Assembly (NCBI GenBank): GCA_021613535.1
Contig: CP075494.1
Span: 12,090,001-12,154,000 of the forward strand
DNA: 64,000 nt
Source of the DNA: Adineta vaga
Taxonomy: Eukaryota; Animalia; Rotifera
Direction: 5' to 3'
Program-made: the position numbers and the translations under genes
Notes under the pieces: model-generated
Databases searched by the model: none
The model's input: only the letters and a program-made list of their open reading frames with translations
Told to the model about the DNA's origin: nothing
Shown: positions 31,202 through 36,041 of the stretch, piece by piece
How the letters are laid out: every line of letters begins with the position of its first letter
Numbering within the stretch: the first letter of the stretch is position 1

Positions 31202-31678
31202 ATGGAAATTAATCGTCCCACATGTACGAGAAGTGGTTGTAGTTTTTTGTTGGAATACGGAAAACTCTAAGCTTTGTTTTAGTAAAACAAAATTGGACGA
31301 CGAGTATCTTACGAGAAGAAGTTGCAACATTCAATACATTGGGTAAAAAAGAAAATATCTTTATTAAGATAAATCAGTTGTCTTAGTTGCAAAAGTATCT
31401 CTATAATTTCGTCACAGGTCATCGGCAATCTCCTATTTATATACTGAATACAGAAACGCAACATGAATATCAAAATCCATTTATAAAATTAATTGAACAA
31501 AATCGATATGGTCGCTTTGCTTCTACACCTGATCGAACACCACCAAATGGAATCTGTTAGTTCTTATATGCTAGACTTTTCTTTTATCTTCTATTAAAAA
31601 TCTTTTTATTTTGTAGTACCTACATGCAATGCAAAAACTTATCCAGATATCATTCCACGTTTTCATTTACTTAAATAA
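31202..31678 (+). CDS. Uncharacterised 93-aa protein, 4 exons, not in the ORF track
   Basis: Exons 31202-31223, 31283-31342, 31418-31555 and 31617-31678. Three GT-AG introns (59, 75, 61 nt), all phase 1, join into one open frame. AATAAA at 31723. Confidence 0.75.
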
Positions 31679-31815
31679 CTATTTTAAAATTTATTATGTA
31701 TTCTTTCTTTTATTTTCTAAATAATAAAGAAAAAGTAAGAAGACAATTTTGATGAAAATAATTATATTGTCCCTAGAATAAGAGAATCGCTTATAAAGCG
31801 CTTGATTACAGGTTA

Positions 31816-33144
31816 TTATAACATCACAGTTTGAATACTGCGATTACTACCAACACTCAATGGTCGTTGAATAAGCTGACCATTGGATAACTGTTGTATA
31901 AGTTGATTTGGTATTTGTGTTGAACAACCGATACCTGAATTTGAAGATAAAACAAATCTGGGCTGACAATTCATTGATGTTTGTTCGTTTTGAATTATAT
32001 TAGATTGTTGAATGCCAGAATCTCTGGATGCATAACCCTAAAATAATCGAAAATAGTCAATGAATGTTGGTGTTTATATAACATAGAAGAAATTAGTGGA
32101 CGTACTATTTGCACTTGTTCTGTATAGACTTGTGCTGGTGGATAAATATCTTGAACATATTCCGTTATCTGATATTGCGGTTGTTCAGCAACGGCAGGTG
32201 CTTGTACTGGATATGGTATAATAATAGGTGGTAACGATGCCGGTGTACAACTACGTGATCGACAGCAATGTCGGCGACGGCGACGATATTTTATACGTAT
32301 TGGTTCTTCGATAATACGTTCTACGACACGACAAGATGAAGATGCATAGTTTTGCTAAGTGACATAGATATCATTTATTTTTCAAAATGATAATTTAGTT
32401 TTTTATAGTACATACTTGTTGCGTATTATATTGACATTGTTGTTGTGCTTGCATCGGAACTGCTACTGGTACTGGTACTGGCACTGGAACAGGTACTTGT
32501 TCACGTATACACATTGGCTGTGGTAACATCATACGTTGTGAACATGGCATTTGCATTTGCATTGGCATTGAAGCAGGTGCAGGGCATGGGTAAGGAACTG
32601 GAACTGGAAATGGACATTGAACAGGAACTGGTACAGGGCAAGGACGATCAACTGGAACACGAACTTCAACATGTACTGGATACGGACGATCTACAGGAAA
32701 TGGTACGGGAACTGATACCGGACATGGGCGATCAACTGGCACTGGATATGGTTCAGGATAGGGCATTGGTACGGGAACGTGCACAGCACACGGACGATCA
32801 ACCGGAACCGGAACTGGTTGTGGAAAAGGAACTGCACAAGGACGATCGACAGGTACTGGATATGGTTGAGGACATGGTACTGAGACAGGAACAGGTACTG
32901 CGCATGGACGGTCAACTGGATAGGGTACCGGCTGAGGAACGGGAACATTGACTGGTGTTGGCATAATTACAGGTTGAATTGTATTTTGTATGGGAACATC
33001 AACAGTTTGAATAAAATTTTGTACGTAAGGTTGTGGCACTGGTATAGGATTAGCATAAGGTTGAGGAACGGGTACATCGTATGGTATCATCATCGGTGGT
33101 GAGCATAATCCCGATGAAGATGAGTTAAATCCACCAGCAAACAT
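31816..33144 (-). CDS. Pro/Val/Cys-rich articulin-like (VPV, PVDRPC) repeat protein, 399 aa, no signal peptide
   Basis: Exons 33144-32416, 32354-32106 and 32037-31816, all phase 0. Six PVDRP(C/Y) units embedded in VPVP strings. Confidence 0.85.
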
Positions 33145-34014
33145 ACTGATATCTTATCAACAAATAATGTTAATGGTAGTGAGACAAAACTACTTTACGT
33201 AATAGTAAAATAGAACCTTCATACGTCAACCTTGTTTAATAAGTATATGAATGAAAACAAAAACAAAACTAAGATTGTTTGTAAATATTATCTTCAATTT
33301 ACACTTGATTTAAATTAATAGTTAATAAACGAGAAAAAAGTATGGACTGATACAAGAAGATGTTCTTCTTATAGAATTTATTTCTGTTCTTCGAATATAA
33401 TGTAAGTATGAGAAGAAGACGACTAATGAAAGATATCGAATAAGGAAAGAAGAAAAAGGAGGAATTGATTCGCTTCAACGATTTGCTACTTATACGTACA
33501 CAAAATTGTAAAATTATTGTAATGAATATTTGATTGTTGTTCAACGAAATTTTCTTACAGATACTGGTGACAATTTAATTCAATCGTTACTTTCCTATTC
33601 TATTCTATCCAATAATTTATTTGATCATAATAACGATGTTCATAATCGAACAAAATTTCCTTCTTTGATCAATCAATTGTCGATATTGATGAATTATTGT
33701 TCGTTATTTTAGAAGAAAAAGGAACCTTCAAAGAAGGCTACAATCAGTTAAAACATGCTGAAGGTTTTTCTGTTCTTCTTTTTTTCAAGTTCGAACACAT
33801 CTATTCACATTTTCTCTCTCATATTCATGCGTAACGGCGGTGATTATCAAGACTAGACAGACACGTTACTACAGTATCTTTTATTTACATTCGAACAAAA
33901 TATGTTTACATGAACAAAAGACCTGAGAGAAAAATAATAGAAACCTAAATGAATTGTTTTTGTTTTTTTTTAACACCGGATCATTTTCTTTCGTTTTGTT
34001 TTCTTCGATTGTCT

Positions 34015-36041
34015 TTAACATTTATGTGTTTTATCACGTTGAACATTATAAACATAATAAATCATATGTTTATTATCCCAAGCAAATAATTTACCTTCAT
34101 AGGGATTATAAGTTAATTGTACTAGGAATTGAAAGGGAACAGCAAAACGAATTTTTGTTGTTGTAAATGCTACTTTCGAATAGATATCATAGACAACATC
34201 GATATAAGATTGTTGTTTATTGTAATATTGTACACCATAAAAGACACCATAGGCAATAAAAGCTTGACTTAAACTTGATGGATTATAGGGTAATATCCAT
34301 GTTTGCTGTGTATCTAATGTATCAGGATTGATATTAGCTGCAATGAAGTTTTTTGTTATTTGATCACGATATAATATCCATAGACCATTTTCATCTATTG
34401 AGAAATCATACCAACTTGATTGTGGTGTATTATAAAGTGGTTCACGGCTTGCAGGTATTTCGGTTGATTGAGTTTCACTTTCGGAAATCAAATCAAAACG
34501 TATAATAGTATTCTTATTTTCAACATTATATATAAAACTTCCTTGATAAACGATATGATTGACACCTGAATAAGGATATGGTAATGTAATGATTCGATTG
34601 GGTTTATTTTGAGTTAGATCGTTTTCACTATTATATTCGTATAATTGATTACCGATGACATGACGTGTAATATAGACTTTTTGAGCACCATTTGCTGTAC
34701 GAGGCATAGGATCTTTAAACCAAGCACCAAATGTATAATTATCTTGTTTAAGAAGGACCGGTGTACCAATAAATGAAAAGATGCAACCTAAATAGATAAA
34801 GAAATAGTTCTCGGATTGCGTATTAAAGTTTGGTCAGATGAAATATTTACGTTGAGCACGACGAAGAGTAGCTAATTGATTTTGATGAAATAGAAAGATA
34901 AAAATGAAATATGATAATAGTTCAAATTCTTACCGTCACGTTTAGATGATTCTAAAATTGAAGAAAAAGAAACATTTTATATAAGGAATAGAAGATAGAG
35001 AGTAGAGTAGTAGATAGACACCTTGATTTGGATCCGATATTGATGAAAAAGGTAGAGATGGGGAGAGTGCAGATGTTGAAGGACAAGTACAAACACCCTA
35101 TGAAAATATCAAGTTCATAGAAATCTAAGTTTTCGGAAAAATCAAACCTACAGGAATACCTTGTGGACCGATCTCACCACGTGGACCTGGAAAACCAATA
35201 CGTCCTGGTGGACCTGGCGGACCTAAAACAAAAGCATAATTTCATATAAAATTTTAACATTCAAATAAATTGTCTACCAGCTGGACCTTGAATTGCTTCA
35301 CCTGGATCGCCTTTTGGTCCCTGTGGACCTGTTGGCCCGTGAAGACCCATGGGACCAGGTAGACCTATTCAATGAATATATCATCCAATAGTAGTATATT
35401 TCTAAAAGTTTTATTTTACCTGTCGGTCCCGGTGGTCCTATTTGACCAGATAGTCCAGGTAATCCTGGGTAACCACGTTCACCACGTTCTCCTTTAGGTC
35501 CACGCAATTCTATAAAGATGAGGATAGTCGTATATAGAATCAGATACTCTATATCAATTACCTTCATTTTCTGTAACCAATTTTTTACAATGATCTACTG
35601 ACTTGACACAGAATGTTGACATTGCCAGTGGCTATAAAGAGACAAGTTATTAAAAAATGATTCATATTCATTTTGTTTTTTCTTCTCTCTTACCGGTACT
35701 TTGAAATAAATCGATCCAAGAAGTGAATCTATATCTTCTGTGTCTTCTGGTTGATGTCTATTGAGTAATTTGGATTTGATACGTGCATGTCTCGATCGAC
35801 GATTTAATGCATCATAATTATTTATTCCTGCTGAAATAATAATTTGTGTTGATTCTAATTCTGTTAATCGTTGATTAAGATTTGCTAATTGATTTCGATC
35901 AATTCGAATCGTACGCGAATAATAAACAAATGAAAGACCCCATAATATCGTTAAACTAGCAAGTAAGAAATATAGAACCATAATATGAAGACGATTCGAT
36001 CCCGCATAATGAATTGTATGAATAACTTTGGATGATTTCAT
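34015..36041 (-). CDS. Gliomedin/colmedin-like type II membrane collagen with olfactomedin domain
   Basis: N-terminal TM, RRSR furin site, Gly-X-Y exons at 35150-35510, OLF domain (GAWFKDP, DFSIDENGLWILY, LTYNPYEGKLFAWD). Confidence 0.92.

What the first reader, a model, noticed from the sequence alone, without database searches (positions are those of the whole stretch)
31816..33144. Intracellular Cys-bearing articulin-like protein: candidate building block of the rotifer intracytoplasmic lamina
Seen: 399 aa with no signal peptide. The core is VPVP strings broken by six DR acid-base dyads (PVDRPC x5, PVDRPY x1), followed by RVVERIIEEPIRIKYRRRRRHCCRSRSC and a Q-rich tail. Known: VPV modules with acid-base dyads define articulins/epiplastins, the membrane-skeleton proteins of euglenids and alveolates. 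Rotifers have a skeletal lamina inside their syncytial epidermis, described biochemically as disulfide-linked keratin-like proteins of roughly 40-50 kDa, whose genes I do not know to be identified. Similar insect repeats occur mostly in secreted cuticle proteins. Inference: an animal epiplast-like skeleton cross-linked through the periodic Cys.
Basis: partly seen in the sequence, partly recalled or inferred. Interest (0 to 1): 0.8.

Follow-up and report, generated by a model that had tools for sequence, protein, structure and literature searches.

The report
Bdelloid-only Pro/Val-rich cytoplasmic protein gene
This is a real, spliced and transcribed rotifer gene for a 399-residue proline/valine-rich protein with no secretion signal. 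It belongs to a small family found only in bdelloid rotifers, and its proposed role in the rotifer's intracellular skin skeleton remains an untested guess that the indirect evidence weakens slightly.

Summary
A three-exon minus-strand gene (33144..31816) encodes 399 aa (44 kDa, 21% Pro, 15% Val, 18 Cys). It has six PVDRP[C/Y] modules, a polybasic-Cys cluster and a Q-rich tail. Intron 1 is confirmed by a spliced RNA contig.

No signal peptide is present. Stop codons lie just upstream of the ATG, the second genomic copy from the old genome duplication (ohnologue) and the orthologues start at the same Met, and no conserved coding block lies upstream.

The genome (6 contigs, 101 Mb) looks like Adineta vaga. 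The family has two copies here (C5 and its syntenic ohnologue on C2). Across 1.84 billion representative proteins, it was found only in bdelloids (Adineta, Rotaria, Didymodactylos).

"Articulin-like" holds only as a likeness in composition:
- charged residues are 10% against 35±6% for epiplastins
- dyads are 12-20 residues apart
- there is no Pfam match
- AlphaFold gives a low-confidence model with no secondary structure

The periodic DR/Cys pattern comes from a tandem duplication private to this copy. Orthologues have 0-2 such modules and 0.9-6.9% Cys. RNA contigs are fragmentary and shallow.

Best reading: a bdelloid-restricted, disordered cytoplasmic scaffold or structural protein. A role in the intracytoplasmic lamina is possible (about 15%) but untested. 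Another gene elsewhere in the genome looks a better candidate.

The parts
31816..33144 (-). Whole coding span of the gene (3 exons, 399 aa plus stop)
   Evidence: Translations; spliced RNA contigs
32416..33144 (-). Exon 1 (243 aa): N-terminal conserved block, PVDRP modules and PV/Q-rich run
   Evidence: dN/dS against the ohnologue is 0.18.
32920..33093 (-). Conserved N-terminal family motif (MMxPYDVPVPQPY..QNxIQxVDxPIQNTIQPVxxPTPV)
   Evidence: alignment A3. This is the only part that keeps similarity to orthologues after SEG masking.
32632..32925 (-). Six PVDRP[C/Y] modules spaced 14-22 aa apart
   Evidence: The DNA pattern search found this array at only 3 loci in the genome.
32722..32946 (-). 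Tandem duplication (114-nt unit, 2.0 copies, 72% match) that expanded the modules in this copy
   Evidence: The ohnologue and orthologues lack the extra about 22 and about 75 aa.
32355..32415 (-). Intron 1 (61 nt, GT..AG)
   Evidence: Joint 32354/32416 in RNA contig X1 record 1
32106..32354 (-). Exon 2 (83 aa): the family's most conserved domain
   Evidence: Alignment A2, 70% mean column identity. Its profile finds only bdelloid proteins.
32247..32330 (-). Acidic EEPIxIK motif followed by a polybasic-Cys cluster (RRRRRHCCRSRSC)
   Evidence: The motif E-E-P-I-x-I-K/R, then RRR..R, is conserved in A2.
32112..32168 (-). ITEYVQDIYPPAQVYTEQV motif, nearly invariant across bdelloids
32038..32105 (-). 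Intron 2 (68 nt, GTACGT..TTTTAG), inferred
   Evidence: Sequence. RNA contig X4 record 18 begins its match exactly at 32037.
31816..32037 (-). Exon 3 (73 aa plus stop): Q/S/N-rich tail
   Evidence: Alignable with the ohnologue and orthologues.
31751..31815 (-). 3' UTR (at least this far)
   Evidence: RNA contig X4 record 18 covers 31751-32037
33455..33504 (-). Only conserved block between the ATG and the upstream gene (about 81% identical to the ohnologue, no ATG). Probably promoter or 5' UTR, not a coding exon.

Best explanation
The gene is one of two duplicate copies (ohnologues) of a family restricted to bdelloid rotifers. It encodes a cytoplasmic, intrinsically disordered protein rich in Pro, Val and Gln.

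Shown:
- it is transcribed and spliced
- it is under purifying selection
- it lacks a signal peptide or TM segment
- it has conserved short motifs at the N-terminus and in exon 2: an acidic EEPIYIK motif, a polybasic-Cys cluster, PLPPIIIP, and ITEYVQDIYPPAQVYTEQV
- this copy alone expanded a PVDRPC module by tandem duplication

Inferred: the protein acts as an intracellular scaffold or structural element. Its extended PV tracts would self-associate. Its polybasic-Cys cluster would dock it to acidic membrane or partner surfaces, possibly after Cys acylation or disulfide formation. The Q-rich tail would add multivalent contacts. Which cell structure it serves is unknown. The intracytoplasmic lamina is one possibility among several.
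For: - Gene model and splicing.
- No signal peptide or TM segment.
- N-terminus: in-frame stops lie directly 5' of the ATG. The start Met is shared by the ohnologue and by independently predicted Adineta steineri and Rotaria models. No conserved coding block lies upstream.
- Hydrophobicity: all bdelloid members have an N-terminal maximum of 1.62 or less, against about 3.0 for the secreted arthropod look-alikes.
- Purifying selection: dN/dS against the ohnologue is 0.18, 0.44 and 0.58 for exons 1, 2 and 3.
- Range: a whole-library HMMER profile of exon 2 finds 14 representatives, and every named one is a bdelloid. There are two copies in the genome, with conserved synteny next to an olfactomedin-like gene.
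- Structure: the AF2 model has pLDDT 53.7 and no secondary structure. No Pfam domain is found.
Against: - There are no localisation, proteomic or tissue data.
- The 5' end of the mRNA was not covered by any RNA contig, so an unconserved upstream exon is not strictly excluded.
- The poly-Arg cluster and Q-rich tail fit a nuclear or condensate protein equally well.
- Low RNA contig depth is unusual for a bulk structural protein.
Confidence: 0.5

Rival explanations
1. The protein is a building block of the intracytoplasmic lamina of the syncytial epidermis, an epiplast-like sheet cross-linked through its Cys residues.
For: - No signal peptide.
- Predicted mass 44 kDa with 18 Cys.
- PV-rich tracts as in membrane-skeleton articulins. 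The polybasic-Cys cluster could bind the inner membrane leaflet.
- The genome holds further no-signal-peptide P/V/C-rich genes, so an intracellular structure made of such proteins is plausible.
- In the library searched, no paper names a lamina gene.
Against: - The family is undetectable outside Bdelloidea, although the lamina is common to all Syndermata and the biochemical description comes from Brachionus.
- The periodic Cys/DR modules are private to this copy. The Didymodactylos member has 0.9% Cys.
- RNA contigs are fragmentary at depth 2-5, while another PV/Cys gene reaches 32 in the same run.
- Published epiplastin criteria are not met.
Confidence: 0.15
2. It is a nuclear or ribonucleoprotein-condensate protein. 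The poly-Arg stretch would act as a nuclear or nucleolar targeting signal, and the Q-rich and PV-rich low-complexity regions would drive phase separation or co-activator-type interactions.
For: - Conserved RRRR(H/R)xRR cluster.
- Q/N/S-rich tail.
- Predicted disorder.
- Modest transcript level.
- No signal peptide.
Against: - No RNA- or DNA-binding domain.
- The very high Pro/Val content and conserved hydrophobic PLPPIIIPIP segment are more typical of structural proteins.
- There is no direct evidence.
Confidence: 0.2
3. It is a secreted matrix protein related to arthropod PVDRPYPV cuticle-type (CPLCP-like) proteins. Its signal peptide would be encoded by a missed 5' exon, or it would be exported unconventionally into the eggshell, glycocalyx or jaws.
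For: - Composition-adjusted BLASTP without masking still gives E=1e-11 to 1e-18 to arthropod proteins with PVDRPYPV repeats. One of these is named a cuticular protein.
- The CPLCP family is proven cuticular (PMC5395146).
- An AG lies directly before the ATG, and the 5' end has no read support.
Against: - Similarity to arthropod proteins vanishes with SEG masking (E>0.1).
- No conserved coding block lies upstream, and in-frame stops precede the ATG.
- No bdelloid member has a hydrophobic N-terminus, whether from the ohnologue locus or from the listed database models of several species.
- The AG before the ATG is not conserved in the ohnologue.
Confidence: 0.1

Closest known systems
Articulins / epiplastins of euglenids and alveolates (Marrs & Bouck 1992, PMC2289617; Goodenough et al. 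2018, PMC6212826)
   Same: - Intracellular, with no signal peptide.
- Val-rich medial region with VPV strings and acid-base dyads.
- Near absence of Gly, Ser and Thr in that region.
- Head/medial/tail layout.
   Different: - Charged residues are 10% against 35±6%.
- Ile is 1% against 9%.
- Dyads are DR only (epiplastins favour E and K) and lie 12-20 residues apart.
- Pro is 33%.
- There is no 12-residue periodicity.
- There is no IMCp or other Pfam match.
- No beta-strand is predicted.
- Homology is not detectable.
Insect CPLCP-type low-complexity proline-rich cuticular proteins and other arthropod PVDRPYPV-repeat proteins
   Same: - The same short motif (PVDRP followed by Y/C-P-V) inside PV-rich tracts.
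- Cornman & Willis had already noted that CPLCPs resemble articulins (cited in PMC8062583).
   Different: - The arthropod proteins carry clear signal peptides and are extracellular cuticle components.
- They lack the bdelloid N-terminal and exon-2 motifs.
- The similarity does not survive low-complexity masking.
Amniote cornified-envelope and keratin-associated proteins (SPRR, KPRP, loricrin, KAPs), by analogy only
   Same: Small, disordered Pro/Cys/Gln-rich proteins without signal peptides that are deposited and cross-linked under the plasma membrane. This comparison rests on my own knowledge. The name 'keratinocyte proline-rich protein-like' appears only as an automatic label on an insect hit.
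   Different: - There is no sequence relationship.
- Those genes are amniote-specific.
- This protein has only one Lys, so classical transglutaminase Gln-Lys cross-linking would be limited.
Second bdelloid PVDRPVP family (G000 C3:12.42 Mb and C6:2.67 Mb; Rotaria and Adineta 'unnamed protein product')
   Same: Bdelloid-only among the named hits, no signal peptide, PVDRP repeats, and an ohnologous pair.
   Different: - Different unique domains: an N-terminal MDR[IV]xNKTxxxxxRFGExxER helix-like head and a GYAPDYYIAERRQ motif.
- Single-exon genes.
- One copy ends in a CCPPPCCPSPCC array.

Membership tests
Epiplastin / articulin | Match to Pfam IMCp (the model Goodenough et al. used for their first search) | tested here: not met
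   No Pfam family at E<=1 for any exon; criterion from PMC6212826
Epiplastin / articulin | Medial domain with about 35±6% charged residues, E>D and K>R | tested here: not met
   10.2% charged in core aa 60-236; K 0%, E 1.7%
Epiplastin / articulin | Numerous acid-base dyads separated by short strings and flanked by V/I | tested here: not met
   Seven dyads in 177 aa; strings of 12-20 and 46 residues; flanked by V on one side and P on the other
Epiplastin / articulin | V about 25% and I about 9%; G, A, S and T nearly excluded from the medial domain | tested here: inconclusive
   V 23.2%, G 0%, S 2.3% and T 0.6% fit. I 1.1% and A 4.0% do not.
Epiplastin / articulin | [quoted passage not shown] | tested here: inconclusive
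   AF2 with 10 sequences: pLDDT 53.7 and no secondary-structure elements. The result is coil only, from a low-confidence model.
Epiplastin / articulin | 12-residue VPVPV-type periodic repeats (articulin sensu stricto) | tested here: not met
   Module spacing is 22, 16, 22, 14 and 14 aa. TRF finds only a 114-nt duplication. The repeat definition is from the abstract of PMC2289617 and my own knowledge.
Epiplastin / articulin | Localises to a sub-plasmalemmal membrane skeleton | not testable with these tools
   Needs immuno-EM or proteomics
Insect CPLCP cuticular proteins | Secreted (N-terminal signal peptide) | tested here: not met
   Maximum 10-aa hydropathy in the first 35 aa is 0.94 here, against 2.8-3.1 in the arthropod hits that have a signal peptide (P0008, P0013, P0016, P0029; P0009 has none in its first 35 aa)
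Insect CPLCP cuticular proteins | Three conserved CPLCP sequence motifs (as stated in PMC8062583) | not tested
   The motif definitions were not available in the texts read. Similarity to arthropod hits disappears after SEG masking.
Rotifer lamina 'keratin-like' proteins (Bender & Kleinow 1988) | About 39-47 kDa, disulfide-linked (figures from my own knowledge; only the citation was verified) | tested here: inconclusive
   Predicted 44.2 kDa with 18 Cys. However, Cys content is not conserved in the family, at 0.9-6.9%.
Rotifer lamina 'keratin-like' proteins (Bender & Kleinow 1988) | Present in Brachionus and other Syndermata, which all possess the lamina | tested here: not met
   The exon-2 profile run against 1.84 billion representatives gave 14 hits, and all named ones are bdelloids. 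Fast-evolving low-complexity relatives could escape detection.
Rotifer lamina 'keratin-like' proteins (Bender & Kleinow 1988) | Physically located in the lamina | not testable with these tools
   Needs integument proteomics or immuno-EM

The most novel reading that the evidence does not exclude
Bdelloid rotifers may build their intracellular 'cuticle' (the intracytoplasmic lamina) from a set of lineage-specific, signal-peptide-less Pro/Val/Cys-rich disordered proteins. The set would include this family, the PVDRPVP family on C3/C6, and the Gly-head/Cys-Pro-core gene on C6:11.11 Mb. That would be a skeleton convergent with protist epiplasts and the amniote cornified envelope, and would give the first gene identities for a structure that defines Syndermata.
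Probability: 0.15. Interest if true: 0.8.

Novelty: new variant of a known kind. Interest (0 to 1): 0.35.

Why it matters
In the literature I could search, the intracytoplasmic lamina is described only by ultrastructure, although it is the character that defines Syndermata. I also know of one 1988 biochemical study. No gene is assigned to it.

This report gives a verified gene model and the family's range (bdelloids only). It also gives a short list of three no-signal-peptide Pro/Val/Cys-rich gene families that can be tested directly by integument proteomics or immuno-EM.

The report also corrects the appealing 'animal articulin' reading. The likeness is one of composition, and the periodic Cys motif is a recent expansion in this copy only.

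Tried and rejected
- Pfam on all three exons, on the A. steineri orthologue, on two insect hits, on family 2 and on the C6 gene gave no family.
- The ESM Atlas feature search with the A. steineri relative gave best scores of 0.75-0.80, at chance level.
- AlphaFold on exon 1 with 10 homologues gave no fold, so no fold search was run.
- The word-based search with the N-terminal 75 aa of P0005 gave only two bdelloid proteins from 10 candidates. This is too insensitive to prove absence.
- An upstream signal-peptide exon was looked for and rejected. The only conserved upstream block (33455-33504) has no ATG. The open frame over it starts with TTG and is not conserved in the ohnologue.
- A fusion with the upstream olfactomedin-like gene was rejected. 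That gene ends with a conserved stop in both ohnologues, and its 3' UTR contig stops at 33866.
- The weak hit at C5:16.42 Mb (L004) is a simple-sequence tract, not a paralogue.
- Literature searches for lamina or lorica genes found none.
Only exon-wise references were used.

Full report
**1. What is there**

On the minus strand, a three-exon gene runs from the ATG at 33144 to the stop at 31816. The exons are 33144..32416 (243 aa), 32354..32106 (83 aa) and 32037..31816 (73 aa plus stop). All junctions are phase 0 with GT..AG introns of 61 and 68 nt.

Public RNA contigs confirm intron 1. One 451-nt contig joins 32354 to 32416. Another contig ends its match exactly at 32037 and runs into the 3' UTR to 31751.

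The product is 399 aa and 44.2 kDa, with 21% Pro, 15% Val, 11% Gln, 18 Cys and one Lys. It has six DR dyads, all in PVDRP[C/Y] (five C, one Y). No residue shuffle out of 20,000 produced even two PVDRP.

Composition and mass were computed on the joined translation inside a script.

**2. Organism and copies**

The window is C5:12,090,001-12,154,000 of a 100.8-Mb genome in six contigs. The only true relatives of the protein are bdelloid rotifer proteins. The genome is therefore a bdelloid, and by my own knowledge its size and six chromosomes fit Adineta vaga.

The conserved exon-2 domain occurs at exactly two loci, this one and C2:5.596 Mb. The C2 copy has the same olfactomedin-like gene upstream, so the two are ohnologues from the old genome duplication.

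dN/dS between them is 0.18 (exon 1), 0.44 (exon 2) and 0.58 (exon 3). Both copies are therefore under purifying selection.

**3. Is it really without a signal peptide?**

- The first 40 residues have no hydrophobic core (maximum 12-aa hydropathy 0.70), and there is no TM-like stretch anywhere.
- Two stop codons lie in frame immediately upstream of the ATG.
- The ohnologue starts at the same Met. So do the independently predicted Adineta steineri and Rotaria models (MFGGGY.., MFGCGF.., MLGCGF..).
- Between the ATG and the end of the upstream gene, the two ohnologues share only one conserved block, 33455-33504 (about 81% identity). It has no ATG, so it looks like promoter or 5' UTR rather than a coding exon.
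- In contrast, arthropod proteins with similar repeats have N-terminal hydropathy maxima of about 3.0, against at most 1.62 for every bdelloid member listed.

The remaining gap is that no RNA contig covered 32908-33144 or the 5' UTR. An unconserved upstream exon is unlikely but not formally excluded. An AG sits directly before the ATG. It could be a spliced-leader acceptor, which is my own suggestion and untested. It is not conserved in the ohnologue.

**4. Family and range**

The word-based search with exon 1 returned two kinds of hit. The first kind is bdelloid proteins that share the whole architecture. The second is many arthropod PV-rich secreted proteins with VPVDRPYPV repeats, one of them named 'cuticular protein'.

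With SEG masking, the arthropod similarity disappears (E>0.1), while the bdelloid similarity remains through the non-repetitive N-terminus.

A profile of exon 2 from six bdelloid sequences (A2) was run by HMMER against 1.84 billion representative proteins. It found only 14. Every one that carries a name is from Rotaria, Adineta steineri or Didymodactylos carnosus, which are three different bdelloid genera. No monogonont, seisonid or acanthocephalan protein appeared.

The conserved signature of the family is:
- MMxPYDVPVPQPY..QNxxQxVDxPIQNTIQPVxxPTPV
- one or two PV(D/E)RP(C/Y) modules
- (I/V)REQVGVPVPVPVPV
- (E/D)EP(I/V)xI(K/R) followed by an Arg cluster that usually carries Cys
- PLPPIIIPIP
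- ITEYVQDIYPPAQVYTEQV
- a Q-rich tail

**5. The periodic DR/Cys pattern is private to this copy**

Tandem Repeats Finder detects a 114-nt unit in two copies at 32722-32946. In the alignment, the window protein has about 22 and about 75 extra residues that all other members lack.

Orthologues have 0-2 D/E-RP modules, and their Cys content ranges from 0.9% to 6.9%.

**6. Comparison with articulins and epiplastins**

Goodenough et al. (PMC6212826) define epiplastin medial domains as follows:
- dense acid-base dyads separated by short strings
- V 25±7%, I 9±4%
- charged residues 35±6%, with E and K preferred
- G, A, S and T nearly excluded
- beta-strand/coil prediction

They also searched with Pfam IMCp. 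They found epiplastin-like proteins in insects but in no other animals.

The core here (aa 60-236) compares as follows:

| Feature | Epiplastin criterion | This core |
|---|---|---|
| V | 25±7% | 23% (fits) |
| G, S, T | nearly excluded | 0%, 2.3%, 0.6% (fits) |
| I | 9±4% | 1.1% |
| Charged residues | 35±6% | 10.2% |
| K | preferred base | none |
| Dyad spacing | short strings | 12-20 residues |
| P | variable | 33% |

No Pfam model matches, and AlphaFold gives a low-confidence model with no secondary structure.

The resemblance is therefore one of composition. The protein should not be filed as an articulin or epiplastin.

The insect CPLCP family was already noted to resemble articulins (PMC8062583), and it is a proven, hard-to-extract cuticle component (PMC5395146). 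The bdelloid family differs from it by lacking a signal peptide.

**7. The lamina hypothesis**

In the library I could search, the lamina appears only as an ultrastructural term. The 1988 Bender & Kleinow paper appears only as a citation. The 39/47-kDa 'keratin-like' figures are from my own memory.

Consistent with the hypothesis:
- no signal peptide
- 44 kDa
- many Cys in this copy
- a polybasic-Cys cluster that could hold the protein at the inner face of a membrane

Against the hypothesis:
- The family was not detected outside bdelloids, although the lamina is shared by all Syndermata.
- There are only two genes.
- Cys content is not conserved.
- RNA contigs are short and shallow, at depth 2-5 and similar to neighbouring genes. 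The tool warns that this depth is a poor measure of expression, so it counts only weakly.

In the same RNA run, a 560-nt contig at depth 32 only brushes the window. It maps uniquely to C6:11.11 Mb. The gene there has no hydrophobic N-terminus and a Gly/Ser/Phe-rich head with GGFGGG-type loops. Its core is Cys-Pro/Pro-Val-rich (PVPVPQPCPVPVP, repeated CCPPPPM), and it has a Gly-rich tail. By composition it is much more 'keratin/loricrin-like' and looks a stronger candidate for a disulfide-linked lamina.

A further bdelloid-only family without a signal peptide carries PVDRPVP repeats on C3 and C6. One copy ends in CCPPPCCPSPCC.

The genome thus encodes several intracellular Pro/Val/Cys-rich proteins. 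This makes an intracellular structure built from such proteins plausible. It does not single out the window gene.

**8. Verdict**

The gene is real, expressed, conserved within Bdelloidea and uncharacterised.

- Best-supported reading (confidence about 0.5): a cytoplasmic, disordered scaffold or structural protein. Conserved short motifs would mediate docking and assembly, with a copy-specific expansion of the PVDRPC module.
- Specific lamina role: about 0.15.
- Nuclear or condensate protein: about 0.2.
- Secreted matrix protein with a missed leader: about 0.1.

The decisive experiments are integument proteomics, immuno-EM or in situ hybridisation, and full-length cDNA. Two other first-stage notes on 'articulin-like' VPV genes in this genome (s1-482907, s1-490073) were seen but not checked.

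Noticed in passing
L016 (G000:C6:11109485-11112514), + strand, first ORF 325-1269 and later exons to about 2280: Multi-exon gene without a hydrophobic N-terminus. It has a Gly/Ser/Phe-rich head (GGFGGG loops), a Cys-Pro/Pro-Val core (PVPVPQPCPVPVP, repeated CCPPPPM) and a Gly-rich tail. Its RNA contig depth is 32, against 4.5 for the window gene in the same run. By composition it is a more keratin/loricrin-like candidate for the intracytoplasmic lamina. No Pfam match.
   Followed up: partly
L005:1164-2153 (-) = G000 C3:12.42 Mb; L012:985-1992 (+) = G000 C6:2.67 Mb: Second family, bdelloid-only among its named hits, of single-exon genes (330 and 336 aa) without a signal peptide. They have an MDR[IV]xNKT..RFGE..ER head, a GYAPDYYIAERRQ motif and PVDRPVP repeats. 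The C3 copy ends in a CCPPPCCPSPCC array. There are 53 relatives, and all named ones are Adineta or Rotaria.
   Followed up: partly
window 34015-34707 and beyond (-): Olfactomedin-like gene immediately upstream, 85% identical at the DNA level to the gene upstream of the C2 ohnologue (conserved synteny). It is transcribed, and its 3' UTR contig reaches 33866.
   Followed up: partly
window 31288-31950 (+): Convergent plus-strand transcript with GT..AG introns at 31342-31416 and 31556-31616. Its RNA contig runs on to 31950 and so overlaps the last 135 nt of the coding region of the minus-strand gene. This reflects either overlapping 3' ends or a merged contig.
   Followed up: no
window 33455-33504: A block of about 50 nt, conserved at about 81% with the ohnologue, lies about 330 nt upstream of the ATG in otherwise unalignable AT-rich DNA. 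It is a candidate promoter or 5' UTR element.
   Followed up: partly
window 33145-33151: The sequence ATATCAG lies directly before the start codon, with one base between the AG and the ATG. It could be a spliced-leader trans-splice acceptor. It is not conserved in the ohnologue and is not covered by reads.
   Followed up: no
window 33278-33411: One RNA contig (run X3, depth 6.8) lies in the presumed 5' flank and then continues for 255 letters unlike the window beyond 33332. Its origin is unexplained.
   Followed up: no
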